DNA of 64,000 nucleotides, taken from contig NC_047024.1 in NCBI RefSeq assembly GCF_902652985.1, positions 16,244,001 through 16,308,000 on the forward strand. The letters run 5' to 3'. The notes under the pieces are model-generated. The model was not told the DNA's origin. It saw nothing but the letters and a program-made list of their open reading frames with translations, and searched no databases. Both the position numbers and the translations under genes were made by a program. Of the stretch, positions 25,967 through 52,870 are shown piece by piece. The DNA is from Pecten maximus. Lineage: Eukaryota. Numbering within the stretch: the first letter of the stretch is position 1; every line of letters begins with the position of its first letter.

Positions 25967-28900
25967 TAATCAAGTCCTGTAGGCCTCTCCTAACCCCTTG
26001 TTAGACCCCGATCAATCAAGTCCTATAGACCTCTCCTAACCCCTTGTTAGACCCCGATCAATCAAGTCCTGTAGGCCTCTCCTTACCCCTTGTTAGACCC
26101 CCATCAATCAAGTCCTATAGACCTCTCCTCACCCTTTGTTAGACCCCCATCAATCAAGTCCTATAGACCTCTCCTAACCCCTTGTTAGACCCCGATCAAT
26201 CAAGTCCTGTAGGTCTCTCCTTACCCCTTGTTAGACCCCCATCAATCAAGTCCTATAGACCTCTCCTAACCCCTTGTAAGACCCCGATCAATCAAGTCCT
26301 ATAGACCCCTCCTAACCCCTTGTTAGACCCCCATCAATCAAGTCATATATACCTCTTCTAACCCCTTGTTAGACCCCGATCAATCAAGTCCTATAGACCC
26401 CTCCTAACCCCTTGTTAGACCCCCATCAATCAAGTCCTATAGACCTCTCCTAACCCCTTGTTAGACCCCCATCAATCAAGTCCTATAGACCTCTCCTAAC
26501 CCCTTGTTAGACCCTCATCAATCAAGTCCTGTAGGCCTCTCCTAACCCCTTGTTAGACCCCCATCAATCAAGTCCTGTAGACCTCTCCTCACCCTTTGTT
26601 AGACCCCCATCAATCAAGTCCTGTAGACCCTTCCTAACCCCTTGTTAGACCCCCATCAATTAAGTCCTATAGACCCCTCCTAATCCCTTGTTAGACCCCA
26701 TCAATCAAGTCCTATAGACCCCTCCTAACCCCTTGTTAGACCCCCATCAATCAAGTCCTATAGACCTCTCCTTACCCCTTGTTAGACCCCATCAATCAAG
26801 TCCTATAGACCTCTCCTAACCCCTTGTTAGACTCCGATCAATCAAGTCGTATAGACCTCTCCTAACCACTTGTTAGACCCCGATCAATCAAGTCGTATAG
26901 ACCTCTCCTAACCACTTGTTAGACCCCCATCAATCAAGTCCTGTAGACCTCTCCTAACCCCTTGTTAGACCCCGATCAATCAAGTCGTATAGACCTCTCC
27001 TAACCCCTTGTTAGACCCCGATCAATCAAGTCGTATAGACCTCTCCTAACCACTTGTAAGACCCCCATCAATCAAGTCATGTAGGCCTCTCCTTACCCCT
27101 TGTTAGACCCCCATCAATCAAGTCCTATAGACCTCTCCTAACCCCTTGTTAGACTCCGATCAATCAAGTCGTATAGACCTCTCCTAACCACTTGTTAGAC
27201 CCCGATCAATCAAGTCGTATAGACCTCTCCTAACCACTTGTTAGACCCCCATCAATCAAGTCCTATAGACCTCACCTTACCCCTTGTTAGACCCCCATCA
27301 ATCAAGTCATATATACCCCTCCTAATCCCTTGTTAGACCCCCATCAATCAAGTCCTATAGGCCTCTCCTAACCCCTTGTTAGACCCTCATCAATCAGGTC
27401 ATGTAGACCCCTCCTAACCCCTTGTTAGACCCCCATCAATCAGGTCATGTAGACCTCTCCTAACCCCTTGTTAGACCCCCATCAATCAAGTCCTATAGAC
27501 CCCTCCTAACCCCTTGTTAGACCCCGATCAATCAAGTCCTATAGACCTCTCCTAACCCCTTGTTAGACCCCAATCAATCAAGTCATGTAGACCTCTCATA
27601 ACCCCTTGTTAGACCCCCATCAATTAAGTCCTGTAGACTCCTCCTAACCCCTTGTTAGACCCCCATCAATCAAGTCCTGTAGACCTCTCCTAACCCCTTG
27701 TTAGACCCCCATCAATGAAGTCCTATAGACCCTTCCTAACCCCTTGTTAGACCCCAATCAATCAAGTCCTGTAGACCCTTCCTAACCCCTTGTTAGACCC
27801 CCATCAATCAAGTCCTATAGACCTCTCCTAACCACTTGTTAGACCCCCATCAATCAAGTCTGATAGATCCCTCCTAACCCCTTTTTAGACCTCCATCAAT
27901 CAAGTATTATAGACCTCACCTAACCCCTTGTTAGACCCCCATCAATCAAGTCCTATAGACCCCCCTAACCCCTTGTTAGACCCCCACAAATCAAGTCCTG
28001 TAGACCCCTCCTAACCCCTTGTTAGACCCCAATCAATCAAGTCCTATAGATCCCTCCTAACCCCTTGTTAGACCCCAATCAATCAAGTATCATAGACCTC
28101 TTCTAACCCCTTGTTAGACCCTGATCAATCAAGTCCTATAGACCTCACCTAACCCCTTGTTAGACCCCCATCAGTCAAGTCCTGTAGACCTCTCCTAACC
28201 CCTTGTTAGACCCCCACAAATCAAGTCCTGTAGACCTCTCCTAACCCCTTATTAGACCCCCATCAATCAAGTCCTGTAGACCTCTCCTAACCCCTTGTTA
28301 GGCCCCCATCAATCAAGTCCTATAGACCTCTCCTAACCCCTTGTTAGACCCCCATCAATCAAGTCTGATAGATCCCTCCTAACCCCTTTTTAGACCCCAT
28401 CAATCAAGTCCTATAGATCTCTCCTAACCCCTTGTTAGACCCCAATCAATCAAGTCCTGTAGACCCCTCCTAACCCCTTGTTAGACCCCCATCAATCAAG
28501 TCCTGTAGACCTCTCCTAACCCCTTGTTAGACCCCCATCAATCAAGTCCTGTAGACCCCTCCTAACCCCTTGTTAGACCCCCATCAATCAAGTCCTATAG
28601 AACTCTCATACCCCCTTGTTAGACCCCCATCAATCAAGTCCTGTAGACCCCTCCTAACCCCTTGTTAGACCCCCATCAATCAAGTCCTATAGACCTCTCA
28701 TACCCCCTTGTTAGACCCCCATCAATCAAGTCCTATATACCTCTCCTTACCCCTTGTTAGACCCCATCAATCAAGTCCTGTAGACCCTTCCTAACCCCTT
28801 GTTAGACCCCAATCAATCAAGTCCTATAGACCCCTCCTAACCCCTTGTTAGACCCCCATCAATCAAGTCCTATAGACCTCTCCTAACCCCTTGTTAGATC

Positions 28901-31900: not shown

Positions 31901-33923
31901 CTATAGACCCCTCCTAACCCCTTGTTAGATCCCATCAATCAAGTCCTATAGACCTCTCCTAACCCCTTGTTAGAACCCCCATCAATCAAGTCCTATAGAC
32001 CCTTCCTAACCCCTTGTTAGACCCCGATCAATCAAATCCTATAGACCTCACCTAACCCCTTGTTAGACCCCCATCAATTAAGTCCTATAGATCCATCCCA
32101 ACCCTTTGTTAGACCCCCATCAATCAAGTCCTATAGACCTCTCCTAACCCCTTGTTAGACCCCATCAATCAAGTCCTGTAGACCCTTCCTAACCCCTTGT
32201 TAGACCCCCATCAATCAAGTCCTGTAGACCCCTCCTAACCCCTTGTTAGACCCCAATCAATTAAGTCCTATAGACCCCTCCTAACCCCTTGTTAGATCCC
32301 ATCAATCAAGTCCTATAGACCTCTCCTAACCCCTTGTTAGAACCCCCATCAATCAAGTCCTATAGACCCTTCCTAACCCCTTGTTAGACCCCGATCAATC
32401 AAGTCCTATAGACCTCACCTAACCCCTTGTTAGACCCCCATCAATTAAGTCCTATAGATCCATCCCAACCCCTTGTTAGACCCCCATCAATCAAGTCCTA
32501 TAGACCTCTCCTAACCCCTTGTTAGACCCCATCAATCAAGTCCTGTAGACCCTTCCTAACCCCTTGTTAGACCCCCATCAATCAAGTCCTGTAGACCCCT
32601 CCTAACCCCTTGTTAGACCCCAATCAATTAAGTCCTATAGACCCCTCCTAACCCCTTGTTAGACCCCCATCAATCAAGTCGTATAGACCTCTCCTAACCC
32701 CTTGTTAGACCCCAATCTGTTAAGTCCTATAGACCTCTCCTAACCCCTCGTTAGACCCCCATCAATCAAGTCCTATAGACCCCTCCTAACCCCTTGTTAG
32801 ACCCCATCAAACAAGTCCTATAGACCTCTCCTAACCCCTTGTTAGAACCCCCATCAATCAAGTCCTATAGACCCTTCCTAACCCCTTGTTAGACCCTGAT
32901 CAATCAAGTCCTATAGACCTCACCTAACCCCTTGTTAGACCCCCATCAATTAAGTCCTATAGACCCCTCCTAACCCCTTGTTAGATCCCATCAATCAAGT
33001 CCTATAGACCTCTCCTAACCCCTTGTTAGAACCCCCATCAATCAAGTCCTATAGACCCTTCCTAACCCCTTGTTAGACCCCGATCAATCAAGTCCTATAG
33101 ACCTCACCTAACCCCTTGTTAGACCCCCATCAATTAAGTCCTATAGATCCATCCCAACCCCTTGTTAGACCCCCATCAATCAAGTCCTATAGACCTCTCC
33201 TAACCCCTTGTTAGACCCCATCAATCAAGTCCTGTAGACCCTTCCTAACCCCTTGTTAGACCCCCATCAATCAAGTCCTGTAGACCCCTCCTAACCCCTT
33301 GTTAGACCCCAATCAATTAAGTCCTATAGACCCCTCCTAACCCCTTGTTAGACCCCCATCAATCAAGTCGTATAGACCTCTCCTAACCCCTTGTTAGACC
33401 CCAATCTGTTAAGTCCTATAGACCTCTCCTAACCCCTCGTTAGACCCCCATCAATCAAGTCCTATAGACCCCTCCTAACCCCTTGTTAGACCCCATCAAA
33501 CAAGTCCTATAGACCTCTCCTAACCCCTTGTTAGAACCCCCATCAATCAAGTCCTATAGACCCTTCCTAACCCCTTGTTAGACCCTGATCAATCAAGTCC
33601 TATAGACCTCACCTAACCCCTTGTTAGACCCCCATCAATTATGTCCTATAGATCCATCCCAACCCCTTGTTAGACCCCCATCAATCAAGTCCTATAGACC
33701 TCTCCTAACCCCTTGTTAGACCCCCATCAATCAAGTCCTATAGACCCCTCCTAACCCCTTGTTAGACCCCCATCAATCAAGTCCTATAGACCTCTCCAAA
33801 CCCCTTGTTAGACCCCATCAATCAAGTCCTGTAGACCCTTCCTAACCCCTTGTTAGACCCCCATCAATCAAGTCCTGTAGACCCCTCCTAACCCCTTGTT
33901 AGACCCCACCTAATCAAGTCCTA
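25967..33923. repeat. 46-bp satellite array (ATCAATCAAGTCCTATAGACCTCTCCTAACCCCTTGTTAGACCCCC), ~170 copies
   Basis: Direct periodicity with higher-order blocks (~1561 bp and ~689 bp). Confidence 0.98.
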
Positions 33924-37141: not shown

Positions 37142-40100
37142 CTAATTGGCATACTCAACTATGTACTCCGGATAACACTGGGCAGAGTCAAAAATCACAA
37201 ATATAGATGGTGTCAGTACATTGTCAACGCAAGAGTTAAATGGGCGCCGTTTAGGATCATCTGGGTCTGGGGGAGGCTTGCGTATTCCAGTGTTCCCAAG
37301 GCAATATCGTCCGACTAATGTGCGGGCCACAAACATGTACTTCTTGCTTAAGCTGATTGTATCCTCAACATTTGTAAAGACAACTTTATCAGTTGAACTG
37401 CTGACAAGTGGTGTGGTCATGGTTGGATCTTGGTTGTAACCTTGAAATATTGCCTGAGAATTGCTGGCACTTGATGGTCCAAATTGTCCTTGCGCAAATG
37501 AAGACTGCCCACTGGCACTTGACGGTCCAAATTGTCCTTGTGCAAATGACACCTGCCCACTAGCGCTTGACGGTCCAAATTGTCCTTGCGCAAATGACAC
37601 CTGCCCACTAGCGCTTGACGGTCCAAATTGTCCTTGCGCAAATGACACCTGCCCACTGCTGCTGGATTGACCAAATGTCACCATACCATTGTTATTTCTG
37701 GTTGGCCCGAATGATTGTGAAGTTGTGTTAAGAAGGCTTTGCTGCTGCGGCTGTTGGTAACCGAAGTTATTAAAAGTAGCTGGCTGTTGTTGTAGGAAAG
37801 GATTGTTGCTCTGAGGAGTGTTGAAAGACGATGGTAGATTGAAGGCCTGGGCAAACTGAGCACTGCTACTTGCTGGTGGTAGGGGAATGGTTCTGCTATT
37901 TGCTAGTGGCAGGGGAAGGGTTCTACCTAATCTCGGAGGCACCTGGCTATATCTGTCTGAGTAGGCAGCTCGCTTAGCAAAGTACGTACCTATAACAAGA
38001 ACGCCATATTATTTCTAGGTATCTGATATGAATCATTCACTTATCGTTCTAGTATAAGTGTGGATGGAGGTCATTTTTCTGTCTTCTGTTTCTAACACTT
38101 CCACATAATCTGATAGTGCTGACAGGTTTTATACTGGTTGACCAATGGCTCGCTTAAAAGATAAACCGTACATGAAGGATGTCTTAACTTGACAAAAGGC
38201 TGTTCCATTAAATGTGTGAGCCCTCCTGTAAGGTTGACTTACCTTAACCAAAGGCTGTCTGGTTAAATTATATCCCCCCCTCTCCCTCCTGTAAAAAGAC
38301 TTACTCTCACTGAAAGCTGTCCTTTCAAATGTACACCCCCTTTGCTCCCTCCTGTAAGAACTAACCTTGGCTGAAGGCTGTCCTTTCAAATGTCCACCCC
38401 CTTTGCTCACTATTGTAAGAACAAGTTACTTGACTGAAAGCTGTCCTTTCAAATGTACACCCCCTTTGCTCCCTCATGTAAGAACTAACCTTGACTGAAG
38501 GCTGTCCTTTCAAATGTACACCCCCTTTGCTCACTATTGTAAGAACAAGTTACTTGACTGAAAGCTGTCCTTTCAAATGTACACCCCCTTTGCTGCCTCC
38601 TGTAAGAACTAACCTTGACTGAAGGCTGTCCTTTCAAATGTACACCCCCTTTGCTCCCTCATGTAAGAACAACTTACATTGGCTGAAGGCTGTCCTTTCA
38701 AATGTTCAACCCGGCCCTTTGCTCCCTCATGTAAGAACTAACCTTGACTGAAGGCTGTCCTTTCAAATGTCACCCCCTTTGCTCCCTCATGTAAGAACAA
38801 CTTACATTGGCTGAAGGCTGTCCTTTCAAATGTTCAACCCGGCCCTTTGCTCCCTCATGTAAGAACTAACCTTGACTGAAGGCTGTCCTTTCAAATGTCA
38901 CCCCCTTTGCTCCCTCATGTAAGAACAACTTACATTGGCTGAAGGCTGTCCTTTCAAATGTTCAACCCGGCCCTTAACTCCCTCCTGTTAGAACAACTTA
39001 CCTGGGTCAAAGGCTGTCCTTTCAAATGTACACCCCCTTTGCTCCCTCCTGTAAGAACAAATTACCTTGGCCGAAGGCTGTCCTTTCAAATGTACACCCC
39101 CTTTTTCTCTCTCCTGTAAGAACAACTTACCTTGGCCGAAGGCTGTCCTTTCAAATGTACACCCCCTTTTTCTCTCTCCTGTAAGAACAACTTACCTTGG
39201 CCGAAGGCTGTTCCGTTCTCCCCACACATCCTCCAGTCCAAACCTTCTCTACAGATGGCATCAAAAGCTTTTGTGCTTGTGCCATGGAATAGCTGTTTTT
39301 CATTGAGCTGGTTTTGACCATAATCTTCCACCATATGTTTTCTGGCTCTATAAGAAAACCCACATTAGATTGTTTTATCAGTATTTTTTTTTTGCATTAG
39401 AATTTACTTGAGATTTCCCAGTCTTATTTTGCTGTGGAGATATCAAGCCAAATTTTAATTTATAAAAGCAAATTGAACGAAGGCTCACATAGGTATACCC
39501 AGCCCCCTTCATCAGTGAAATTAGTCTGTTGATGGGTTCATGACATATTGTGTGTACTTGCAATCCCGAAATTAGTAGAATGCAGCCTTTGACCTTTAAC
39601 CTTTACCCTTGACTAATGGTCACCAAAGTTTAATCAGGTGTAAACCTTCATAGAGTTGGGGTATAAAAATAGATGGGGATTCAGATGCAAGATTACTTAC
39701 AGACAGAATTTCTGCCACAGACGAGGGTTCTGTATCCTTCTGATCGCTGTGATATGTTTGGCGGACATGCTGTGTGAGAACAGTGTCTTGATATGGCGGA
39801 ATTCTACAGAGCTTGTCTCCAGGTTAACAATAACATAGTCCTGTAAATAAAACCTCACTATATCACTATATATTACATAGTCCTGTAAATAAAACCTCAA
39901 TATATCACTATATATTACAGTACTGTAAATAAAACCTCAATATATCACTATATATTACAGTCCTGTAAATAAAACATCAATATATCACTATATATTACAT
40001 AGTCCTGTAAATAAAACCTCAATATATCACTATATATTACATAGTCCTGTAAATAAAACCTCAATATATCACTATATATTACAGTACTGTAAATAAAACC

Positions 40101-43100
40101 TCAATATATCACTATATATTACAGTCCTGTAAATAAAACCTCACTATATCACTATATATTACATAGTCCTGTAAATAAAACCTCACTATATCACTATATA
40201 TTACATAGTCCTGTAAATAAAACCTCACTATATCACTATATATTACATAGTCCTGTAAATAAAACCTCACTATATCACTATATATTACAGTACTGTAAAT
40301 AAAACCTCACTATATCACTATATATTACAGTCCTGTAAATAAAACATCAATATATCACTATATATTACATAGTCCTGTAAATAAAACCTCAATATATCAC
40401 TATATATTACATAGTCTTGTAAATAAAACCTCAATATATCACTATATATTACAGTACTGTAAATAAAACCTCACTATATCACTATATATTACAGTACTGT
40501 AAATAAAACCTCACTATATCACTATATATTACATAGTCCTGTAAATAAAACCTCACTATATCACTATATATTACATAGTCCTGTAAATAAAACCTCACTA
40601 TATCACTATATATTACATAGTCCCGTAAATAAAACCTCACTATATATTACAGTCCTGTAAATAAAACCTCACTATATCATCACTATATATTACAACAGTA
40701 CTGTAAATAAAACTTCACTATATCACTATATATTACAGTCCTGTAAATAAAACCTCACTATATCACTATATATTACATAGTCCTGTAAATAAAACCTCAC
40801 TATATATTACATAGTCCTGTAAATAAAACCTCACTATATCACTATATATTACATAGTCCTGTAAATAAAACCTCACTATATCACTATATATTACATAGTC
40901 CTGTAAATAAAACCTCACTATATCACTATATATTACATAGTCCTGTAAATAAAACCTCACTATATCACTATATATTACATAGTCCTGTAAATAAAACCTC
41001 ACTATATATTACATAGTCCTGTAAATAAAACCTCAAGTGCTATATATTACATAGTCCTGTAAATAAAACCTCACTATATCACTATATATTACATAGTCCT
41101 GTAAATAAAACCTCACTATATCACTATATATTACATAGTCCTGTAAATAAAACCTCACTATATCACTATATATTACATAGTCCTGTAAATAAAACCTCAC
41201 TATATCACTATATATTACAGTACTGTAAATAAAACCTCACTATATATTACATACATGTAGTCCTGTAAATAAAACCTCACTATATCACTGTAACTTTCAC
41301 ACTACATTTGTTGGGGGCCCATCTCCCATAGGGTCAAGGTCATGTGTTATGTAGAGAAACCTTCACACTACATCTGTTGGGGGTCAATATCCCATAGGGT
41401 CAAGGTCATGTGTTATGTAGAGAAACCTTCACACTACATCTGTTGGGGGTCCATCTATCATAGGGTCAAGGTCATGTGATATGTAGAGAAACCTTCACAC
41501 TACATTTGTAGGGGGCCCATCTCCCATAGGGTCAAGGTCATGTGATATGTAGAGAAACCTTCACACTACATCTGTTGGGGCCCATCTCCCATAGGGTCAA
41601 GGTCATGTGTTATGTAGAGAAACCTTCACACTACATCTGTTGGGGGTCCATCTCCCATAGGGTCAAGGTCATGTGTTATGTAGAGAAACCTTCACACTAC
41701 ATCTGTAGGGGGCCCATCTCCCATAGGGTCAAGGTCATGTGATATGTAGAGAAACCTTCACACTACATCTGTTGGGGGTCCATCTATCATAGGGTCAAGG
41801 TCATGTGATATGTAGAGAAACCTTCACACTACATTTGTAGGGGGCCCATCTCCCATAGGGTCAAGGTCATGTGATATGTAGAGAAACCTTCACACTACAT
41901 CTGTAGGGGGCCCATCTCCCATAGGGTCAAGGTCATGTGTTATGTAGAGAAACCTTCACACTACATCTGTAGGGGGCCCATCTCCCATAGGGTCAAGGTC
42001 ATGTGATATGTAGAGAAACCTTCACACTACATCTGTAGGGGGCCCATCTCCCATAGGGTCAAGGTCATGTGATATGTAGAGAAACCTTCACACTACATCT
42101 GTTGGGGGCCCATCTCCCAAAGGGTCAAGGTCATGTGATATGTAGAGAAACCTTCACACTACATCTGTTGGGGGCCGATCTCCCATAGGGTCAAGGTCAT
42201 GTATAGATGTTTACCTTGTCACCTTCTTCAGGCATCGGGTGCCAGTATGATGGCGGCTCCAGGTCCTTACTGTCCTGGTTTTCCTGTAGAAATGTTGTGA
42301 ACTGGTTACAGTCCTCATGACTGGTCATCAACCAGAGTCTTTTACAGTACCTACAGCTCGTCTGTAACATAAGAATTTCTGACTGTGAGATTTGGTGACA
42401 AAATAAACTTGTGTGACAATGACAAAAACTGCACATATTTTACTATATATTTATTCAAATACACAAAACACATAATAAAACTCATCTTACTGGACAGGTA
42501 ATTTTGTAAGAGGTACTGAGGGCCTACGAGATACGAGATACCATAATCTTTCTCTAAGTCACATATATATCAACACGGAAACATTTTTTTGTGACAATGC
42601 CATTTTTTGTCACCCATCTGCAATGCTAATATCTCCGATACACTGGACCGTAGTTCACTGCCCCTTGATAGCTCAGACTCTATGTACAACATGACATATC
42701 CCATTTTTCCAATAATACCCCGATGAAATTAGAACCACTACCAGTCTGGACTTGATGACAGATGTCATGGTATATCAAACTTACCTGTTCTTGGAATGTC
42801 AGTTAAAGACGAAAATTTTTTAAAATGCAAAATAAAACGACTTTAGATTTAAGAAAATACAAATGAAGAATAATTACGTTTTTACAGTTTGGGCACTCAA
42901 ATTCCTTGATACCAGCGTCCATGACCACTGGGAAACTGCAGTTTGGACACCTGTAAGTAAAGTTTTTTTGTTTATCATAAGTAATATTCCTTCTGTCTGA
43001 CTAATTAGGACATTATCTAAACATATGAATTACATTGTACAACCATTCCTTCTGTATGACTAATTAGAACATTTTTTTTTTGAAAACCTTTGGGAAAAAA

Positions 43101-46100
43101 ATCTGGATATTAAAGGAATCATTTTCACTCACGTTACTAGGTCCTCCATTTTGGTGATAGATTCTACAGCTTGTTTATGTAGCTTATCCTCCAACAGCTC
43201 CAGGATCAAGTTTGGCAGAATCTTCTTGGCTTGGCCTGTAATAAAAATAATCATCATTGAAGACAAGATGGCCATACAGAGATTATGCTAAGTATGTTGG
43301 AAATGGGACCCTGTCTTAAAATAGGAAAATTTGGTTGCATTTTTATTTTGAAAATTTGGAAAGCAGCATCAGTGTTTTGATGATTTTCCTTTACTGGTTT
43401 CTAAATCATCCTCATCAGAATTTATAACATCCCAGTGGACAGTTACTGTAATTATTTAGTAAGGCTTGGACATTGCTCTCTAGTGGTGTCACAGTGAAGT
43501 GTTGGTATATCTATGTATTCCTCCCTAGTGGTGTCACAGTAAAGTGTTGGTGTATCTATGTATTACTCCCTAGTGGTGTCACAGTAAAGTGTTGGTGTAT
43601 CTATGTATTACTCTCTAGCGGTGTCACAGTAAAGTGTTGGTGTATCTATGTATTACTCTCTAGTGGTGTCACAGTAAAGTGTTGGTGTATCTATGTATTA
43701 CTCCCTAGTGGTGTCACAGTAAAGTGATGGTGTATCTATGTATTCCTCCCTAGTGGTGTCACAGTAAAGTGTTTGTGTATCTATGTATTACTCCCTAGTG
43801 GTGTCACAGTAAAGTGTTGGTGTATCTATGTATTACTCTCTAGTGGTGTCACAGTAAAGTGTTGGTGTATCTATGTATTACTCTCTAGTGGTGTCACAGT
43901 AAAGCGTTGGTGTATCTATGTATTCCTCCCTAGTGGTGTCACAGTAAAGTGTTGGTGTATCTATGTATTACTCTCTAGCGGTGTCACAGTAAAGCGTTGG
44001 TGTATCTATGTATTACTCTCTAGTGGTGTCACAGTAAAGTGTTGGTGTATCAAGTAGTGCTCCAATCATATCCTGTTTGACGTGTGATTGGAAAATAAGT
44101 GCTTCTCTACTGAGCTGTCTCTGTGTAGCCTAATGTGGTATGCATGTTCAATGAAAAGGAATCTAACTTCACATTTAATCCCGTCAATGTATAATTTGTA
44201 CTAGGAGCAGGTGATCAGGTAAACAGGGATTTAGAGAATGTAGCAACCTCAATATCAGCATACGTAAAGATTTACTATTCTATAATCAACAATACAATAC
44301 AATACAATACAATACAATACAATACAATAATATTTTATTTGAGTGTCACACATCATTTTACAAATGTACAATGAGGATAACGATAAAAGCTTGTTAAAAA
44401 TGTACATGATGATGTCCAGCTGTATTCGGCTTATGAGACACTTTAAAAAATATGTATGCTCTTTGAATATCAAATGTCAGACTTTTACCTTTATACATCA
44501 TAGCCTACAACAGCGAACGTCTATGCTTCATCATAAAATATATAGATTTCGATAAGATATTGAAGATCACTATTTCGCAGAATATACAAACGTGTCTCTA
44601 GCATTTAAAGAATAAAAACCGTTACATAGTGTACTATATTGTTGAAATAACTCAGCACGTATATCGCTGTATGTAGGACATTCACATAGGTAATTTTCAA
44701 CAGTGTTCATACAAAATGGACATAATCGCTGGTCCTCAGGTAAATTTGTGTAACGACCAGTCTCTATCACTAGAGGTAGACATCCGAGTCGTAGCTTAGA
44801 TAAATGGCTATGGTAGTGGCATGTTATATGGGATGTGACGTAGTATTCAGAAATATAATCCTTTTTGAAACATCTGTATGTCCGAAGTTTGTTTCCCTGG
44901 TTTCGTCGGTTTTTCCATAGATTTTTGAACCACGTATATTCATTAGACACAATGAGTGCATTGCTAATATTATGCATTTTTACTCTAATTGTAGTGTTAC
45001 CGTTAAGTATATGTAATATATATAATAGTTTTGGATGGTGAAGCGTTTACCATGCAGACTGTACAATGGCATTATTTACAATCAATGACTGGGTAAACAA
45101 GAGTGTTAGTAGAGCATGGTTTGAATGAGGAATTTAGTGTCATTGTCAAGGATATATGTCTCGGCAAAATGCAAGCACCTGAGAAAATCTATCACATCGT
45201 AGATTTACAGAACCAAGCTTAATGTAATTTTCCTTACATCTTCGTAACAAATCAGGTTACTGTAGCTGTTCAGTGAATTTTTGCCTACAGCTATGCCCCC
45301 TACTTTTCTAAGGTCGGAGAACAGCCAATGACAGGCCATCCCTAATTTCTTTCGATCGTCAGTAGCTTCAGAATCTTTTACCTTGCGGCGCTAAACTGCA
45401 GGCTTAACCTTCGAAGGAAGTTGTCATCCCAGATTGTTTCAACCAGCATTGCGATGGCAGTAAAAGACTATAGAGATAGCTTGAACGCCTGCGTATCTAT
45501 ATACCATGAAATTGTATTTACACCTTTCAAAATGAGACAGGAATGATCAGAGAACTTAGTACTTACTTTCTGGTACTGTACTCTTACAGTTTTCACTTGG
45601 ACATTTAATCTGAGCCTGAAAAAGAAAACAGAAAAAAACTATAATGGAGAAGGACAGGAGGACTGTGTATTTGAGTATTTACACTGTTAACAGATATTTT
45701 ATTTAATATTTCCTTGACCCTGAATAAACAAAATATACCAAGGGCTATATCTCTGATTTTACTGGAACATCTGACAATATGTCTGTTTGGAAAGATAGGC
45801 CCAGGAGTACTCCCTACAAAAAATAGTGTTATGAATGTCCTTGACTTTGTGACACAAATTGAACAAAGGGATGTAACTCTGTATGAATTATATATAGCTA
45901 TCTATAGTACACTATATGATATATGTTCCAACAATGTGACACATGATGTACGAAGGCCATTTACTGAATTAACTGAGCTATTTGGCATATGATATATATA
46001 AATATGATCCAAACTATGTGACAGATGTTGAACAAAGGGCAATAACTCTGTATCAAGTAAGTATCTGGCATTTGATGCTGAACAAAGGGCAGCAGCTCAA

Positions 46101-49100
46101 TATGAAGTCTCCAATCCGGTACATACAAAACTAGTCCTAGGGTAAAATGATTCATAGCTTAATTGTATTTGTATTTTAATTGTATTGACCTCCTGACTAT
46201 CGGGGGACAGGATCTGACACGCCCACCATCACATGACTTGACAAACCATTGTATTGACCTCCTGACTATCAGGGGACAGGATCTGACACGCCCACCATCA
46301 CATGACTTGACAAACCATTGTATTGACCTCCTGACTATCGGGGGACAGGATCTGACACGCTCATCATCACATGACTTGACAAACCATTGTATTTACCTCC
46401 TGACTATCGGGGGACAGGATCTCTTTCACCTCTTTCTCCACACAAGAGTTACAGATGAGATGGCCGTCACAACACTGCACCACCATGTCTGTGTTTCGGC
46501 TCATCTTACACGACTCGCAGGGTAGCGACGATGAGGATACTTCTGTAAACATAAAAATACAAAATGGATGTAAGTAATATTTCCTTTGATTCTTCACCAA
46601 GATTAATTGTAAAAGAGGGGGCATGGGACTGGGGGCATGGGGCGGGGGGCATGGGGCAGGGGACATGAGGCAGGGGACATAGGGTAGGGGACATGAGGCG
46701 GGGGACATAGGGTGAGAGGCATAGGGTGGAGGACATAGGATGAGGATACTTCTGTATACATAACAATACAAAATGGATGTAAGTAATATTTCCTTTGATT
46801 CTTCACCAAGATTAATTGTGAAAGAGGGGGCATGGGACTGGGGGCATGGGGCAGGGGGCATGGGGCGGGGGGGCATGGGGTGGGGGCATAGGGCATGGGG
46901 CGGGGACATGGGGTATGGGGCGGGGGGCATGGGGCATGGGGTATGGGGCGGGGGGCATGGGGCATGGGGTTGGGAACATGGGGGGGGGGGGGGGGGGTGC
47001 ATGGGACTGGGGGCATGAGGCGGGGGACACTAACACTCAATACTCGAAAACACATGTTAATCAAAATCAATTAAACTAAGTTAAAGCATCAATTAATACA
47101 GATTAATTAATGTTATATTGTTAAATGATTGTCATGTCATTTAGTGAGCAATGCTTTCACCTCATATAATTTTGAATTTTCAGATTGTATGTGACAAAGG
47201 AAACAAAATTTTTGTTTATTCGATAAAAAGGTTCTTAAAATCACTTCGATTTTATATGAGATTGACAAAAACTCTTCATAATCTTTTTAACTTTCTAATA
47301 GATATGTAAATTTCAAAAACATTTTCAAATAAACAGTATGTTTTACAAGAAATGAGATTATTTGATTGATAGTGGATTAGATAGGATGTTGGAAATATCA
47401 GGATTTCAGAGATATCATTATCTCGTACGGTATCTAATGAGATATCACGTACCATTATCTCCTACGGTATCCAATGAGATATCACGTACCAATATCTTGT
47501 ACGGTATCCAATGAGATACCACGTACCATTATCTCGTATGGTATCCAATCAGATACCACGTACCATTATCTCGTACAGTATCCAATGAGATACCACGTAC
47601 CATTATCTCGTACGGTATCCAATGAGATACCACGTACCATTATCTTGTACAGTATCTAATGAGATACCATGTACCATTATCTCGTACAGTATCCAATGAA
47701 ATACCACGTACCATTATCTCGTACAGTATCCAATGAAATACCACGTACCAATATCTCGTACAGTATCTAATGAGATACCACGTACCAATATCTCGTACAG
47801 TATCTAATGAGATATCACGTACCATTATCTCGTACAGTATCTAATGAGATACCACGTACCATTATCTCGTAAAGTATCTAATGAGATACCACGTACCATT
47901 ATCTCGTACAGTATCCAATGAGATACCACGTACCATTATCTCGTAAAGTATCCAATGAGATACCACGTACCATTATCTCGTACAGTATCTAATGAGATAC
48001 CACGTACCATTATCTCGTAAAGTATCTAATGAGATATCACGTACCATTATCTCGTACAGTATCTAATGAGATATCACGTACCATTATCTCGTACAGTATC
48101 TAATGAGATATCACGTACCATTATCTCGTACAGTATCTAATGAGATACCACGTACCATTATCTCGTACAGTATCTAATGAGATATCACGTACCATTATCT
48201 CGTACAGTATCTAATGAGATATCACGTACCATTATCTCGTACAGTATCTAATGAGATATCACGTACCATTATCTCGTACAGTATCTAATGAGATATCACG
48301 TACCATTATCTCGTACAGTGTCTAATGAGATATCACGTACCATTATCTCGTACGGTGTCCATAGATTCTGCAGTTATCATGCAAATGTCTTTCTCGTCTT
48401 CTGAAGACTGGTATTCATCAAGGACATTTCTAACAGGCTGAAGAAAAAATATGCAATTTTATTAAAAGTTTCATTCAAACAAAAGTAGTGAATTAACCGA
48501 ATTAGCTGAAAAACATAACAGTTTGGAATAATCATGTTATGAAGATACCAATTTAATGAATCTGTTACATATTTATAATTTAGTAATTTTATGAAAATCC
48601 ATACCATACTGACATCACAGGATTATATTGACATACCTATACACCTGTCACAGGATTATATTGACAGACCTTTACACCTGTCACAGGATTATATTGACAT
48701 ACCTTTACACCTATCACAGGATTATATTGACATACCTTTACACCTATCACAGGATTATATTGACATACCTATACACCTCTCACAGGATTATATTGACATA
48801 CCTTTACACCTGTCACAGGATTATATTGACAGATCTTTACACCTGTCACAGGATTATATTGACAGACATACCTTTACACCTATCACAGGATTATATTGAC
48901 ATACCTTTACACCTGTCACAGGATTATATTGACATACCTTTACACCTGTCACAGGATTATATTGACATACCTTTACACCTATCACAGGATTATATTGACA
49001 TACCTTTACACCTGTCACAGGATTATATTGACACACCTTTACACCTGTCACAGGATTATATTGACATACCTTTACACCTGTCACAGGATTATATTGACAG

Positions 49101-52100
49101 ACATACCTTTACACCTGTCACAGGATTATATTGACAGACATACCTTTACACCTATCACAGGATTATATTGACAAACCTTTACACCTGTCACAGGATTATA
49201 TTGACATACCTTTACACCTGTCACAGGATTATATTGACATACCTTTACCCATGTCACAGGATTATATTGACACATGTCACAGGATTATATTGACAGACAT
49301 ACCTTTATACCTCTCACAGGATTATATTGACACACCTTTACACCTGCCACAGGATTATATTGACATACCTTTATACCTGTCACAGGATTATATTGACATA
49401 CCTTTACACCTGTCACAGGATTATATTGACATACCTTTACACCTATCACAGGATTATATTGACATACCTTTACACCTATCACAGGATTATATTGACATAC
49501 CTTTACACCTGTCACAGGATTATATTGACATACCTTTACCCCTGTCACAGGATTATATTGACATACCTTTACACCTGTCACAGGATTATATTGACAGACA
49601 TACCTTTACACCTATCACAGTATTATATTGACACAACTTTACACCTGTCACAGGATTATATTGACATACCTTTACACCTGCCACAGGATTACATTGACAC
49701 ACCTTTACACCTATCACAGGATTATATTGACAGACCTTTACACCTGTCACAGGATTATATTGACACACCTTTACATCTATCACAGGATTATATTGACATA
49801 CCTTTACACCTGTCACAGGATTATATTGACAGACATACCTTTACACCTGTCACAGGATTATATTGACAGACATACCTTTACACCTGTCACAGGATTATAT
49901 TGACATACCTTTACACCTGTCACAGGATTATACTGACATACCTTTACACCTGTCACAGGATTATATTGACAGACATACCTTTACACCTATCACAGGATTA
50001 CATTGACACACCTTTACACCTATCACAGGATTATATTGACACACCTTTACACCTGTCACAGGATTATATTGACATACCTTAACACCTGCCACAGGATTAT
50101 ATTGACACACCTTTACACCTATCACAGGATTATATTGACAGACCTTTACACCTGTCACAGGATTATATTGACACACCTTTACACCTATCACAGGATTATA
50201 TTGACAGACCTTTACACCTGTCACAGGATTATATTGACACACCTTTACACCTGTCACAGGATTATATTGACATACCTTTATACCTCTCACAGGATTATAT
50301 TGACATACCTTTATACCTCTCACAGGATTATATTGACACACCTTTACACCTATCACAGGATTATATTGACATACCTTTACACCTATCACAGGATTATATT
50401 GACCTACCTTTACACCTGTCACAGGATTATATTGACCTACCTTTACACTTGTCACAGGATTATATTGACATACCTTTACACCTATCATAGGATTATATTG
50501 ACAGACATACCTTTATACCTCTCACAGGATTATATTGACACACCTTTACACCTGTCACAGGATTATATTGACAGACATACCTTTACACATGTCACAGGAT
50601 TATATTGACATACCTTTTCACCTGTCACAGGATTATATTGACACCTTTACACCTGTCACTGGATTATATTGACATACCTTTACACCTATCACAAGATTAT
50701 ATTGACACACCTTTACACCTGTCACAGGATTATATTGACAGACATACCTTTACACATGTCACAGGATTATATTGACATACCTTTACACCTGTCACAGGAT
50801 TATATTGACATACCTTTACACCTGTCACAGGATTATATTGACATACTTTTATACCTCTCACAGGATTATATTGACATACCTTTACACATGTCACAGGATT
50901 ATATTGACATACCTTTACACCTGTCACAGGATCATATTGACATACTTTTACACATGTCACAGGATTATATTGACATACCTTTACACCTATCACAGGATTA
51001 TATTGACATACCTTTACACCTGTCACAGGATTACATTGACATACCTTTTTAGGAACAGCAGCTTTCCCTTTTCCTTTTGGTCCACCAACATAGTTGGATT
51101 TTTTACCATAAAGCCGTATGGGAGGTGCTGAGTTGGTTTCTTTTTCTCTTCTATCTGATTGTGAGTGTGTTTTGATTTTGTTGTTGCCAAGGGCAACTAC
51201 AATGTCAGGTTCTTTGTTTCCTGGTTGAGAAGCCGGATCAGTTTGAGTTGACTTCGGATAATTCCCATCTACCATGCTATCCACTAGGAAGTCTAGGTAG
51301 TTCTCATTTCCTCGCTGTACAGACGATTCTATCTTCTGTTTTATCCACTTCCTACAGGCATCAGGAAACCATTCACACTAAAAGAGAATTATATCATAGC
51401 ATAAAAAATCATGGTAAAATATATTATAGTACGATAAATTTTGGAGAAATGTTATCCTCTGTGTCACCAAACTTCAAACTTAGCTCGACATTGGCATCAT
51501 TCAGATCTGATGAATTATAACCTACCACTTTGTCAATGTCCTCCTCCTCATTGGTGGTAGTACCCTGATCTGATAAATTATAAATATAACCTACCACTTT
51601 GTCAATGTCCTCCTCCTCGTTGGTGGTACCCTGATCTGATGAATTATAACCTACCGCTTTGTCAATGTCCTCCTCCTCGTTGGTGGTGGTACTCTGATCT
51701 GATGAATTATAACCTACCACTTTGTCAATGTCCTCCTCCTCGGTTGGTGGTACCCTGATCTGATGAATTATAACCTACCACTTTGTCAATGTCCCCCTCC
51801 TCGTTGGTGGTGGTACCCTGATCTGATGAATTATAACCTACCACTTTGTTAATGTCCTCCTCGTTGGCAGTACTCTGATCTACTGATGACTGGTTCTTTT
51901 CCTGTCTAGATCCAATGTCTTTTTTGGATGGTTTAGATTCCTTTCCTGGTAGAGGTCCAGTGTACTTCATTCCTTTTGTCGGTTCAGATTGTACAATGCT
52001 CCTACTTTGTAGATTCTTACACAAACTTGAATCTCTCTCAGTGAATTCATTTTTGATTCGACTTACTTTGACAGGAGGCTCTGTTACAGAAACATTTTGT

Positions 52101-52870
52101 ATTTTGGTTTGTTTATGATCTTTGTTTACTTGTGGAGAAGCATTGTCCTCACTTATGTCACTGATGACTATTGGACTGTTTGCATTGAATTTCCTCCTTG
52201 CTTTAATCTTGGGTCGGTCTGGACTAGGGGAACTACACACTATGGGACTACTGCTGGTCAAATCGTCATCACTAACCTCATATTTATCATATGGTCTCTT
52301 TAATTTACAATCAGGAACAGATTTCTTCACAGGTGAACTTTGTATTTCTTCTGCACCTGATGAATCACTGTCAACATAATCCTCTAGTTCTTCATCTTTT
52401 TCATCCAAAAAAATCACTTTAGGCACAAAAGGTGGAAGACTTTCTGGGACAACAGCATTGCTGGTACATTGCTTTGATTGTGATAATTGCTTCTGTGCAC
52501 TTTGACTTGGAGAGACACATGTGGTCAGTATGTCATGTTTTGGTCCTAACCCGATGTTATACAAGTCACTAGGGCTCCACTTTGACCGTTTGTTTGAGGT
52601 AGATGCAGTATTTGCTTCTGTCTGATCAGAAGAAAGCAAGTTGTCTGTCTCTGAATTTTCCTGATCTACACTGTCATGTGTAGGTTTGTCATTCTCTAGT
52701 CTAGATCTAGTACTTGATTGTTCCTCGTCCTCATCATATGATGATGGTCCACTGTCTTCTAGCTCAACTTTTTTCTGTGATGACTGAGCAATCAAGGAAA
52801 GAATTTTGGAATCCCATAATGCCTCTGTTCTCTCATCTAAAAGGTCAAGGTCATCATCTTCATCAGTCAT
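37142..52870 (-). CDS. RNF216-like RING1-IBR / PARP (mono-ADP-ribosyltransferase, PARP7/11/12-like) fusion protein, ~1038 aa
   Basis: Coding exons (minus): 52870-51842, 51377-51045, 48437-48341, 46542-46397, 45615-45567, 43235-43133, 42950-42878, 42361-42215, 39840-39701, 39347-39196, 37989-37142. All are GT-AG and phase-consistent. Motifs: CUE-like EEDINKVCEWFPDA...YPK; RING CESC..CCDGHLICNSC..CPSENC; IBR CPNC..CPNC..CRYC..HEDC; PARP PSYW, RIQNPRLW, LFHGT, FGQGTYFA, MFVARTLVG, PSIFVIF..QCYPEYIVEY. Confidence 0.9.
38170..39212. repeat. ~60-66-bp tandem repeat spanning the exon-11 donor, ~16 copies, decaying away from the exon
   Basis: Minus unit ...ACAGCCTTCGGCCAAG|GTAAGTTGTTCTTACAGG... Confidence 0.93.
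39833..41290. repeat. 42-bp (39-bp variant) tandem repeat spanning the exon-10 acceptor, ~35 copies
   Basis: Minus unit ...GAGGTTTTATTTACAG|GACTATGT... Confidence 0.95.
41295..42201. repeat. 66-bp minisatellite, ~14 copies, starting ~13 nt into intron 9
   Basis: CATAGGGTCAAGGTCATGTG...GTAGAGAAACCTTCACACTACATC unit. Confidence 0.95.
43473..44052. repeat. 45-bp intronic minisatellite, ~13 copies
   Basis: CTAGTGGTGTCACAGTAAAGTGTTGGTGTATCTATGTATT unit. Confidence 0.95.
44288..44980 (-). mobile_element. 5'-truncated non-LTR retrotransposon 3' end (RTEX/CR1-like)
   Basis: KLRTY..FK..SKLRLGCLPLVIETGRY..RLCPFC..ECP C-terminal motif, followed by AATAAA and an (ATTGT)n tail. Confidence 0.8.
46179..46422. 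repeat. 69-bp tandem repeat spanning the exon-5 donor (3 extra copies)
   Basis: Minus: ATCCTGTCCCCCGATAGTCAGGAG|GTAAAT at the true site, |GTCAAT in the copies. Confidence 0.9.
46530..47030. repeat. ~210-bp duplication of the exon-5 acceptor, with a (GGGGCAT)n G-rich repeat
   Basis: GATGAGGATACTTCTGTA...CCAAGATTAATTG at ~46530 and ~46740; GGGGCAT runs. Confidence 0.85.
47410..48355. repeat. 37-bp tandem repeat spanning the exon-4 donor, ~25 copies
   Basis: Minus unit GTACGAGATAATG|GTACGTGATATCTCATTAGATACT. Confidence 0.95.
48613..51048. repeat. 33-bp (37-bp variant) tandem repeat starting at the exon-3 donor, ~70 copies
   Basis: Minus unit AAAG|GTATGTCAATATAATCCTGTGACAGGTGT; fills ~95% of the intron. 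Confidence 0.96.
51503..51880. repeat. 60-63-bp tandem repeat spanning the exon-2 donor, ~6 copies
   Basis: Minus unit ...GAGGAGGACATTGACAAAGTG|GTAGGTTATAATTCATCAGATCAG... Confidence 0.9.

What the first reader, a model, noticed from the sequence alone, without database searches (positions are those of the whole stretch)
37142..52870. RBR ligase with its catalytic RING2 replaced by a PARP domain: RNF216-like RING1-IBR-ART fusion
Seen: splicing 11 coding exons gives a C3HC4 RING (CESC..CCDGHLICNSC..CPSENC) and a C6HC IBR (LVTCPNCSFPVVMDAGIKEFECPNCKNTSCRYCKRLW..HEDC). About 20 residues later, in the same exon (42361-42215), the PARP domain begins (PSYW), so no RING2 exon can be hidden between them. 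Knowledge: the RING1-IBR closely resembles RNF216/TRIAD3 as I recall it (..LVRCPSCSFP..). In RBR E3s, RING1 holds E2~Ub for transfer to the RING2 cysteine. The ART triad is H (FHGT), Y (GTYFA), I (PSIFVIF), as in mono-ARTs PARP7/11/12. Inference: one polypeptide coupling E2~ubiquitin binding to mono-ADP-ribosylation. It might modify ubiquitin/E2, build ADPr-ubiquitin hybrids (analogous to the two-protein DTX3L-PARP9 system), or act as a pseudo-ligase. I do not know a characterised protein with this architecture.
Basis: partly seen in the sequence, partly recalled or inferred. Interest (0 to 1): 0.9.

Follow-up and report, generated by a model that had tools for sequence, protein, structure and literature searches.

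The report
Scallop RING1-IBR-PARP fusion protein
This king-scallop gene makes one protein in which the front half of the ubiquitin ligase RNF216 (RING1 and IBR) runs straight into a PARP12-type mono-ADP-ribosyltransferase where the ligase's catalytic RING2 should be. The family is conserved in molluscs, a brachiopod and probably an annelid, and I found no study of it.

Summary
Window 52870-37142 (minus strand) is one 11-exon gene with GT-AG borders and fitting phases. It matches the database protein 'uncharacterized protein LOC117335471 [Pecten maximus]', 1038 aa. The domain order is: disordered N-terminus, a CUE/UBA-like three-helix bundle, RING1, a helix, IBR, an 11-residue linker, then a PARP fold split by a ~180-aa disordered insert. 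Exon 42361-42215 encodes both the end of the IBR and the start of the PARP fold. No RING2 exists in the gene or the window.

The RING1-IBR part is specifically RNF216-like: a family profile hits RNF216 in the PDB at E 2e-22, against 0.04 for the next RBR. It also shares all four intron positions and phases with the canonical RNF216 gene, which the scallop keeps on another chromosome. The PARP part is PARP12-like, with an H-Y-I triad.

The fusion has one clade on the PARP tree and two old paralogue groups. Group A keeps the IBR; group B lost it. The RING1 zinc ligands and catalytic H and Y are invariant in 23 sequences.

It cannot be an RBR ligase. My best reading is an active mono-ART steered by an E2- or ubiquitin-binding module. 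That mechanism is inferred, not tested. Databases hold these proteins only as 'uncharacterized', and I found no paper on them.

The parts
51842..52870 (-). Coding exon 1 (aa 1-343). It starts at ATG 52870 and encodes an acidic, Ser-rich disordered N-terminus with a conserved DDLDL motif. The donor is GTG|GTAGGT, in the first copy of a 63-bp repeat.
   Evidence: AF2 pLDDT <50 for residues 7-332
51045..51377 (-). Coding exon 2 (aa 344-454). It carries an invariant FP motif and helices 2-3 of a confident three-helix bundle (aa 337-378) that looks CUE/UBA-like, followed by a disordered linker.
   Evidence: F and P invariant; pLDDT about 90; CUE-Ub 1otr Z 5.3, UBA 2qho Z 4.8, CUE 2ejs Z 4.7; weak
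48341..48437 (-). Coding exon 3 (aa 455-486 plus 1 base), a disordered linker.
   Evidence: (tblastn of P0152)
46397..46542 (-). Coding exon 4 (aa 487-535). It encodes the first six zinc ligands of RING1: C495, C498, C510, H514, C517, C520.
   Evidence: invariant in 23 sequences; RBR RING1 folds, Z 6.3-8.6
45567..45615 (-). Coding exon 5 (aa 536-551 plus 1 base). It encodes the last two RING1 ligands, C540 and C545.
   Evidence: intron position and phase identical to canonical RNF216
43133..43235 (-). Coding exon 6 (aa 552-585 plus 2 bases). It encodes the RING1-IBR helix. In RNF216 this helix is the allosteric ubiquitin site.
   Evidence: helix 560-582; 84-95% identical among scallops; role of the helix from PMC9834252
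42878..42950 (-). Coding exon 7 (aa 586-610), the first half of the IBR.
   Evidence: (best PDB hit RNF216, 6e-5)
42215..42361 (-). Coding exon 8 (aa 611-659), the junction exon. It encodes the second half of the IBR (C-x2-C...H-x2-C), an 11-residue linker, and the first 13 residues of the PARP fold from PSYW (P647-K659).
   Evidence: single copy in the genome; model range 646-1038 aligns with PARP15 460-656
39701..39840 (-). Coding exon 9 (aa 660-705 plus 2 bases), part of the N-terminal PARP fold. Its acceptor lies in the last copy of a 42-bp intronic tandem repeat.
39196..39347 (-). Coding exon 10 (aa 706-756 plus 1 base). It carries the H-G-T motif with catalytic H727.
   Evidence: PARP 7.5e-10; PARP12 8e-13
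37142..37989 (-). Coding exon 11 (aa 757-1038 plus stop). It encodes Y759 (GTYFA), an in-frame S/Q/G/F/N-rich disordered insert (aa 777-958, 37930-37385), then the C-terminal PARP strands with I1019.
   Evidence: insert of 80-400 aa in 21 of 23 family members; pLDDT <50 for 777-958; TM 0.92 to PARP12 across both halves

Best explanation
Shown: this is one Pecten maximus gene (LOC117335471) encoding a 1038-aa protein. Its parts, in order, are a disordered N-terminus, a small CUE/UBA-like three-helix bundle, the RING1, connecting helix and IBR of an RNF216 paralogue, and then, after 11 residues, a PARP12-type ADP-ribosyltransferase fold with an H-Y-I triad. A long disordered loop splits that fold. 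There is no RING2 and no catalytic cysteine, so the protein cannot work as an RBR ligase. The fusion forms one clade on the PARP tree, is found in molluscs, a brachiopod and probably an annelid, and is under strong constraint in both halves.

Inferred mechanism: the PARP domain is an active mono-ADP-ribosyltransferase. The RNF216-derived module is its targeting or regulatory part. RING1 keeps the surface that in RNF216 docks the E2 (UbcH7). The helix and IBR keep the site that in RNF216 binds an allosteric ubiquitin or K63 di-ubiquitin. The upstream helical bundle may add a further ubiquitin contact. Together these would bring the transferase to places where E2~Ub or ubiquitin chains are present, so that it mono-ADP-ribosylates itself, ubiquitylation enzymes, ubiquitin, or ubiquitylated substrates. 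It would read ubiquitin and write mono-ADP-ribose. It would not write ubiquitin.
For: One gene and its architecture:
- The exon chain has fitting phases.
- A database protein maps at 96-100% identity to the 11 exons.
- The junction exon is single copy in the genome.

RNF216 origin:
- The family profile hits RNF216 at 2.4e-22 over RING1-helix-IBR only, against 0.037 for the next RBR.
- The IBR part of the model aligns with RNF216 7m4m at 39% identity, Z 6.3.
- RING1 aligns with RBR RING1 domains, including HOIP RING1 bound to UBE2L3.
- Four of four introns match the canonical RNF216 at C1:6.561-6.575 Mb. That gene's RING2 exon hits RNF216 at 5e-13.

Constraint:
- All eight RING1 ligands, H727-G-T and Y759 are invariant, and I1019 is nearly so, in 23 sequences spanning three phyla.
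- RING1, helix and IBR are 84-95% identical among scallops. The PARP halves are 75-88%, the N-terminus 45-49% and the insert 29-40%.

Single clade:
- All 45 RING1-bearing proteins fall in one PARP clade (SH-aLRT 94).

Not a RING-type E3:
- The residue after the last RING1 cysteine, the 'linchpin' position of activating RINGs, is not conserved and not basic (K, Q, T, L, E, N, S, D, G).

Functions of the retained surfaces in RNF216:
- RING1 binds UbcH7 canonically. [quoted passage not shown] K63 di-Ub activates the enzyme (PMC9834252).

PARP12-type fold:
- E 6.5e-76 by sequence profile, TM 0.92 to PARP12 and Z 25.4 to PARP15.
- That H-Y-[I/L] PARPs are mono-ARTs is established knowledge of the family (Kleine 2008; Vyas 2014; from my own knowledge).
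Against: - There is no biochemical or binding evidence of any kind.
- In RNF216, E2~Ub binding was undetectable without allosteric di-Ub, and most contacts to the donor ubiquitin come from the IBR-RING2 helix and RING2. Both are missing here (PMC9834252). RING1 alone may therefore bind E2 only weakly.
- Group B paralogues have lost the IBR and keep only RING1 and the helix. The full allosteric ubiquitin site is therefore not essential to the family.
- The CUE-like assignment is weak: Z about 5, and Pfam CUE in 1 of 23 members at E 0.098.
- The canonical hydrophobic E2-contact position between the first two RING1 cysteines is small or polar and variable. It is also a Cys in RNF216.
- No RNA-seq of P. 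maximus itself could be inspected.
Confidence: 0.5

Rival explanations
1. Ubiquitin-independent scaffold. The RING1(-IBR) module has been re-used purely as a zinc-stabilised protein-protein, RNA-binding or oligomerisation domain. The protein then acts like an ordinary PARP12/PARP7-type antiviral or stress mono-ART, and its disordered insert drives condensate or granule localisation.
For: - Group B lost the IBR and keeps only RING1 and the helix.
- The donor-ubiquitin and catalytic elements are gone.
- The putative E2-contact position is variable.
- PARP12-type catalytic domains are shuffled onto many N-termini in bivalves, for example a mind-bomb-like protein with a PARP domain in Ylistrum (P0233).
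- A long S/Q/N/G/F-rich insert is conserved as a feature in 21 of 23 aligned family members.
Against: - RING1 retains the RBR RING1 fold and all eight ligands across three phyla.
- The helix, which in RNF216 is a ubiquitin-binding element, is the best-conserved segment among bivalves.
- An upstream CUE/UBA-like bundle is present in group A.
Confidence: 0.25
2. Single-chain ADPr-ubiquitin hybrid writer. RING1 docks E2~Ub, and ubiquitin is discharged directly, without RING2, onto the ADP-ribose that the neighbouring PARP domain has just placed on a substrate. Alternatively, the PARP domain ADP-ribosylates the ubiquitin or E2 held by RING1. This would be a one-protein equivalent of PARP7-DTX2 or PARP14/PARP9-DTX3L.
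For: - Two activities that co-operate as separate proteins in vertebrates are covalently linked here (review PMC12687431).
- Both halves are conserved to a similar degree.
- RING1 has the RBR type that holds E2~Ub.
Against: - There is no DTC-like ADP-ribose-binding domain; Pfam finds only PARP and IBR.
- No linchpin residue is conserved, and RBR RING1 domains hold E2~Ub in the open, unreactive form.
- The donor-ubiquitin-binding helix and RING2 are missing.
Confidence: 0.12
3. Decoy or regulator. The protein is an E2 or ubiquitin sink, or a dominant-negative partner of canonical RNF216, and its PARP domain serves only for auto-modification or is inactive.
For: - The canonical RNF216 is retained in the same genome.
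- The fusion has the binding half of an RBR but not the catalytic half.
Against: - The H-Y-I triad and the H-G-T and Y-F-A motifs are invariant or nearly so over a very long time span. That argues for a working active site.
Confidence: 0.08
4. Annotation or assembly artefact: two neighbouring genes, an RNF216-like fragment and a PARP gene, wrongly joined.
Against: - The IBR end and the PARP start lie in one uninterrupted exon.
- The same order occurs in more than 15 species from independent assemblies.
- Logan contigs of 2.7-4.5 kb hold the whole ORF without introns.
Confidence: 0.02

Closest known systems
RNF216 / TRIAD3 (RBR E3 ubiquitin ligase)
   Same: [quoted passage not shown] All four introns in this region share position and phase with the scallop's own RNF216 gene.
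   Different: Homology ends right after the last IBR cysteine. The IBR-RING2 helix, RING2 with the catalytic Cys, and the C-terminal helix are absent, and a PARP domain takes their place. The fusion's pre-RING three-helix bundle was not found in the 10 kb upstream of the canonical gene's RING1 exon.
PARP12 (also PARP7/TIPARP and PARP11): H-Y-I mono-ADP-ribosyltransferases
   Same: The catalytic fold and motifs match: E 6.5e-76, Foldseek TM 0.92. The H-Y-I triad is shared. Vertebrate PARP12 is the nearest PARP outside the family, at 44-49% identity.
   Different: There are no CCCH zinc fingers and no WWE domain. A disordered insert of 80-400 aa sits between the Y-S-x-x-Y helix and the following strand. 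Other PARP12-like proteins have 3-10 residues there.
DTX3L-PARP9/PARP14 and DTX2-PARP7 (RING E3 plus PARP acting as separate proteins)
   Same: Both pair a RING-type ubiquitin module with a PARP-family domain (review PMC12687431).
   Different: Those systems are two polypeptides and use a RING-DTC module. The DTC binds ADP-ribose and the RING is an activating RING. Here there is one polypeptide, an RBR-type RING1, and no DTC.
PARP10 (mono-ART with ubiquitin-interaction motifs that bind K63 chains; from my own knowledge, Verheugd et al. 2013)
   Same: This is the closest functional analogy to my best explanation: a mono-ART carrying its own ubiquitin-reading elements.
   Different: PARP10 uses short UIM helices, not an RBR-derived RING1-IBR. 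Its catalytic domain belongs to a different PARP subgroup.

Membership tests
[quoted passage not shown] | RING1: a C3HC4 cross-brace with the RBR-type fold | tested here: met
   All eight ligands are invariant in 23 sequences. The model aligns with RING1 of RNF144A, ARIH2, HOIP, HOIL-1 and parkin at Z 6.3-8.6.
[quoted passage not shown] | IBR domain (C6HC) | tested here: met
   Pfam IBR scores 24.4 against a cut-off of 24.3, and IBR_1 scores 28.9 against 27, on the full protein. The ligands are nearly invariant in group A. The IBR is absent in group B paralogues.
[quoted passage not shown] | RING2 (Rcat) with the catalytic cysteine that accepts ubiquitin | tested here: not met
   The protein goes from the IBR to PARP within one exon. 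The profile match to RNF216 stops at chain residue 154 of 277. No RING2-like ORF exists in any frame of the window.
RNF216/TRIAD3 subfamily | Specific relatedness of RING1-IBR to RNF216 rather than to other RBRs | tested here: met
   RNF216 scores 2.4e-22 against ARIH1 at 0.037 and parkin at 0.51. Four of four introns are shared with the canonical RNF216 of the same genome.
PARP / ARTD family, mono-ART (H-Y-hydrophobic) class | PARP catalytic fold with a His, Tyr and Ile/Leu/Val triad | tested here: met
   PF00644 scores 88.7 bits against a cut-off of 26.7. H727 and Y759 are invariant and I1019 is nearly invariant. TM to PARP12 is 0.92.
PARP / ARTD family, mono-ART (H-Y-hydrophobic) class | NAD+-dependent mono-ADP-ribosyl transfer | not testable with these tools
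   This needs an enzyme assay.
PARP12 orthologues | N-terminal CCCH zinc fingers and WWE domains | tested here: not met
   None of the 23 family members has a WWE or CCCH Pfam hit. Vertebrate PARP12 hits carry PF02825.
Deltex-type RING-DTC ligases | A DTC domain next to the RING | tested here: not met
   Pfam finds only PARP, IBR and a weak RING in the full protein.
CUE / UBA ubiquitin-binding domains (aa 337-378) | A three-helix bundle with an F-P loop after helix 1, recognised by the family model | tested here: inconclusive
   The bundle is confident (pLDDT about 90) and F-P is invariant. Fold matches are weak: CUE-Ub 1otr Z 5.3, UBA 2qho Z 4.8, CUE 2ejs Z 4.7, mixed with unrelated small helical hits. 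Pfam CUE appears in only 1 of 23 members, at E 0.098.

The most novel reading that the evidence does not exclude
The protein is a self-contained writer of a mixed ADP-ribose/ubiquitin mark. RING1 holds a charged E2. The attached PARP domain either ADP-ribosylates the held ubiquitin or E2, or provides the ADP-ribose acceptor onto which ubiquitin is discharged without any RING2. As a 'Rosetta-stone' fusion it would also predict an unrecognised functional link between RNF216 and PARP12 in vertebrate innate-immune signalling.
Probability: 0.12. Interest if true: 0.85.

Novelty: new variant of a known kind. Interest (0 to 1): 0.64.

Why it matters
Cross-talk between ADP-ribosylation and ubiquitylation is a fast-moving field (PARP9/14 with DTX3L, PARP7 with DTX2, tankyrase with RNF146, RNF114 readers). 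All known cases couple separate proteins and use RING-DTC or WWE-RING ligases.

Here evolution has welded the E2- and ubiquitin-binding half of an RBR ligase to a mono-ART and kept the fusion across three phyla, in two paralogue lines, with zinc ligands and catalytic residues intact. This gives four things:
- A natural single-chain system in which to ask what an RBR RING1-IBR does without RING2.
- A candidate ubiquitin-guided mono-ART.
- A Rosetta-stone hint that RNF216-type and PARP12-type activities act on the same pathway. From my own knowledge, both are tied to TLR/TRIF and antiviral signalling in vertebrates.
- A conserved example of a large disordered loop tolerated inside the ART fold.

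It also matters for annotation. Members are currently named 'uncharacterized', 'RNF216-like', 'PARP7S', 'PARP11-like', 'ABL1' or 'serine-rich adhesin'.

Tried and rejected
Tools that did not run:
Transcript support therefore rests on intron-free Logan contigs of orthologues and on the public gene model.
- Complex prediction (RING1-IBR, aa 486-650 of P0152, with the scallop's own ubiquitin, L004:1901-2128:-) was counted but NOT FOLDED by a rule of the tool. It gives no evidence either way.

Joined model:
I never assembled or typed the spliced sequence.
- Full-length analyses used P0152, a database protein returned that maps at 96-100% identity to the exons.

Searches that came back empty or weak:
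- The junction exon alone against the PDB found nothing.
- The RING1 exon alone gave only a weak parkin RING1 hit.
- The word-limited homologue search with the RING1-IBR region found only close bivalve orthologues and no canonical RNF216. This reflects a limit of the tool, not absence.
- A search for the pre-RING 'FP' domain in the canonical RNF216 locus found no hit in 10 kb upstream.
- No intron-free E2 gene suitable for a pairing test was found.
- Folding the pre-RING exon alone gave only two helices at pLDDT 65. The full-length model showed that the first helix is encoded by exon 1.
- Eight literature searches (one search was rejected for syntax) found no description of an IBR-PARP or RNF216-PARP fusion.
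- 'PARP7S' is only an automatic orthology label.

Ideas considered and rejected:
- The low-complexity stretch in exon 11 is an unrecognised intron. It is in frame, it is kept in the public model, and it is present in the intron-free contigs of orthologues.
- RING2 is hidden in an intron or downstream of the gene.

Full report
WHAT IS THERE. The window lies at C10:16,244,001-16,308,000 of a 918,306,378-bp, 3983-contig genome. The best database match to the gene is 'uncharacterized protein LOC117335471 [Pecten maximus]' (P0152), so the organism is the king scallop.

I read the DNA at each border. This gives a chain of canonical GT-AG introns whose phases all fit. tblastn of P0152 maps at 96-100% identity to 11 coding exons; lower figures occur only where an HSP runs past an exon border. 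The exons are 52870-51842, 51377-51045, 48437-48341, 46542-46397, 45615-45567, 43235-43133, 42950-42878, 42361-42215, 39840-39701, 39347-39196 and 37989-37142.

The full-length protein used later is a database entry returned by a search, not something I assembled.

DOMAINS. On single exons, Pfam finds PARP (7.5e-10 and 2e-5) and IBR_1 (3e-5). The best solved relative of the first IBR exon is RNF216 (6e-5). The best relative of the H-G-T exon is PARP12 (8e-13). The full protein passes Pfam's own cut-offs for PARP, IBR and IBR_1.

An AlphaFold2 model built with 23 homologues shows the following:
- Residues 1-332 are disordered.
- Residues 337-378 form a confident three-helix bundle.
- Residues 389-489 are disordered.
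- RING1 spans about 490-548, followed by a long helix at 560-582 and the IBR at 584-640.
- The PARP fold spans 647-776 and 959-1038, with residues 777-958 disordered.

Foldseek places the PARP part on PARP12 (TM 0.92 to the target across both halves). A search independent of Foldseek gives four results:
- PARP15 at Z 25.4 for residues 646-1038.
- RBR RING1 domains for residues 488-582: RNF144A at Z 8.6, ARIH2 at 7.5, HOIP RING1 bound to UBE2L3 at 7.2, plus HOIL-1 and parkin.
- RNF216 for residues 583-638, at Z 6.3 and 39% identity.
- Weak matches for residues 333-382 to a CUE-ubiquitin complex (Z 5.3), a UBA domain (4.8) and CUE domains (4.6-4.7).

THE JUNCTION AND THE MISSING RING2. Exon 42361-42215 has 49 codons and is in phase 0 at both ends. 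It encodes the last four IBR ligands, 11 linker residues and the first residues of the PARP fold. Nothing can therefore be spliced in between them.

The family profile matches RNF216 only over chain residues 7-154 of 277, ending just before RING2. The scallop's own RNF216 RING2 exon finds nothing in any frame of the 64-kb window (best E 1.7), and a RING2-like cysteine pattern is absent. The junction exon, the RING1 exon and the pre-RING exon are each single copy in the genome.

WHERE THE TWO HALVES COME FROM. The profile of 23 family members hits RNF216 at 2.4e-22. The next RBRs are ARIH1 at 0.037 and parkin at 0.51. The scallop keeps a canonical RNF216 on another chromosome (C1:6.561-6.575 Mb), with RING1, helix, IBR and RING2 exons. 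Its RING2 exon hits RNF216 at 5e-13.

All four introns inside RING1-helix-IBR lie at the same residue and in the same phase in both genes. They fall after the 14th or 15th residue past the C-x2-C of RING1 (phase 0), in the seventh codon after the last RING1 Cys (phase 1), in the codon before the first IBR Cys (phase 2), and two residues after the fourth IBR Cys (phase 0). This is independent genomic evidence for descent from an RNF216 duplicate. Homology ends inside the next exon.

The PARP half is closest to PARP12 by sequence profile (6.5e-76). Outside the family its nearest relatives are vertebrate PARP12 proteins, which carry WWE domains that are absent here.

A CONSERVED FAMILY, NOT A ONE-OFF. 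A full HMMER scan with the C-terminal PARP piece, follow-up searches and name look-ups show two groups.

Group A has RING1-helix-IBR-PARP. It includes four scallops, Pinctada, Saccostrea, Magallana, Mytilus, Sinanodonta, Solemya, Haliotis rubra and the brachiopod Lingula.

Group B has RING1-helix-PARP with the IBR replaced by a variable acidic linker. It includes Haliotis, the chiton Liolophura, Mya, Mizuhopecten, Pinctada, Lymnaea, Bulinus, Biomphalaria and Bradybaena, and weakly the annelid Owenia.

Several species have both groups. P. maximus has its group B gene on the same chromosome, at C10:35.93-35.96 Mb.

On a tree of the PARP domain, all 45 RING1-bearing sequences fall in one clade (SH-aLRT 94), which splits into group A (92) and group B (98). 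The RING1-less rows inside that clade are N-terminally truncated fragments, with two exceptions: one Argopecten protein, and a pair of RING1-less proteins (P0034 and P0067) that branch beside groups A and B. This was a quick tree with no bootstrap, and I did not run an AU test.

The oyster orthologue cluster has 301 member sequences. It includes Logan contigs of 2.7-3.5 kb that hold the whole 857-859-aa ORF. Mussel contigs (4.2-4.5 kb) and contigs from unnamed samples (3.2-3.4 kb) likewise hold whole ORFs of 995-1145 aa. Because the scallop gene has ten introns over 15.7 kb, I infer that these contigs are transcripts.

CONSTRAINT. In the 23-sequence alignment, the eight RING1 ligands, H727-G728-T729 and Y759 are invariant. 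I1019 is nearly invariant.

Identity to P. maximus in the three scallop orthologues, by region:

| Region | Identity |
|---|---|
| RING1 | 84-91% |
| Helix | 84-95% |
| IBR | 86-92% |
| PARP halves | 75-88% |
| N-terminus | 45-49% |
| Insert | 29-40% |

The insert (S/Q/N/G/P/F-rich, 80-400 aa) is present in 21 of 23 members, although its sequence is not conserved. Other PARP12-like proteins have 3-10 residues at that position.

HOW IT PROBABLY WORKS. Without RING2 the protein cannot form an E3~Ub thioester, so it fails the defining test of an RBR ligase.

The residue after the last RING1 cysteine is variable and mostly non-basic. In activating RING E3s this is the linchpin that closes E2~Ub (established knowledge). 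Direct RING-type ligase activity is therefore unlikely.

Wang et al. 2023 (PMC9834252) show what the retained parts do in RNF216. RING1 binds UbcH7 in the canonical way. [quoted passage not shown] The parts that bind the donor ubiquitin, the IBR-RING2 helix and RING2, are the ones missing here. E2~Ub binding to RNF216 was undetectable without the allosteric activator.

My best reading (confidence about 0.5) is therefore an active H-Y-I mono-ART whose RNF216-derived module, perhaps helped by the CUE/UBA-like bundle, targets or gates it through E2 and/or ubiquitin-chain binding. The rivals are:
- a ubiquitin-independent scaffold (0.25);
- a single-chain ADPr-Ub hybrid writer (0.12);
- a decoy (0.08);
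- an annotation artefact (0.02).

None of the binding or enzymatic steps is shown. The only available in-silico test was not run by the tool.

NOVELTY. Databases hold these proteins under automatic names: 'uncharacterized', 'Poly [ADP-ribose] polymerase', 'RNF216-like', 'PARP7S', 'PARP11-like', 'ABL1'. 'PARP7S' is only an orthology label that appears in a proteomics table. Eight full-text searches found no description of an IBR-PARP or RNF216-PARP fusion. The library misses most subscription journals, and I could not query InterPro architectures.

Both parts are well-known kinds and the combination is new to the literature I could reach, so I class it as a new variant of a known kind. Domain shuffling of PARP12-type domains is common in bivalves; one example is a mind-bomb-like protein with a PARP domain in Ylistrum. 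That tempers the surprise. The age of the fusion, the strength of constraint, and its relevance to ADP-ribose/ubiquitin cross-talk (review PMC12687431) keep it interesting.

LIMITS. The annelid member is a weak match.

Noticed in passing
window 51427-51881 (minus strand), intron 1 next to exon 1: A 63-bp repeat encoding EE(E/G)DIDKVVGYNSSDQ-like units continues past the annotated exon-1 donor. It stays open for 116 codons in a frame shifted by one base, because of an extra C near 51742. Each unit carries its own GTG|GTAGGT donor-like site, and a GT...AG pair links 51431 to 51377. Isoforms with more repeat units, or a recent intronisation of coding repeats, are possible.
   Followed up: partly
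window 38221-39211, 39833-42202, 43472-44051, 47416-48353, 48615-51048: Most introns of the gene are filled with long tandem arrays of period 33-66 bp, with up to 73 copies. The acceptor of exon 9 (TTTACAG|GACTATGT at 39840) is the last copy of the 42-bp repeat.
   Followed up: partly
window 5884-7206(+), 14711-15793(+), 19396-20751(+), 22433-23743(-): There is a cluster of four long ORFs made of leucine-rich repeats (LRR_8 at E 1e-25 to 1e-34; one has an LRRNT cap). They lie downstream of the fusion gene and may be immune-type LRR genes.
   Followed up: partly
window 25968-33923 and 1-3611: A satellite of 173 copies of a 46-bp unit (GC 0.475, GC skew about -0.59) spans 8 kb. A 35-bp array of 104 copies sits at the window start.
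   Followed up: no
G000 C10:35,932,892-35,959,098 (minus strand): This is the P. maximus group B paralogue (RING1-helix-PARP without IBR; 83-94% identical to the Mizuhopecten protein P0102). It lies on the same chromosome, about 19.7 Mb away, and has far fewer introns: its first exon covers 470 aa.
   Followed up: partly
G000 C1:6,561,000-6,575,000 (loci L002, L003): This is the canonical RNF216 gene of the scallop, with an intact RING2 exon (catalytic Cys in the motif SEGCNKM).
   Followed up: yes
P0152 aa 5-13 (window 52858-52832) and group B proteins aa about 35-60: A short acidic-hydrophobic motif is conserved at the N-terminus: DDLDL(L) in group A and D-D-V-I-F-[LIV]-S in group B. It resembles SUMO-interaction motifs. 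I saw this by eye and with a crude regex only.
   Followed up: partly
P0233 (Ylistrum balloti): A 'mind-bomb-like' protein carries Mib/HERC2, ZZ and ankyrin domains together with a PARP12-type catalytic domain. It is a second, different E3-type N-terminus joined to a PARP domain in scallops.
   Followed up: no
window 57677-59608(+) and 60829-62856(+): Two long ORFs (643 and 675 aa) lie upstream of the gene. One has no Pfam match and the other only a marginal one (ARMET_C). Their nature is unknown.
   Followed up: no
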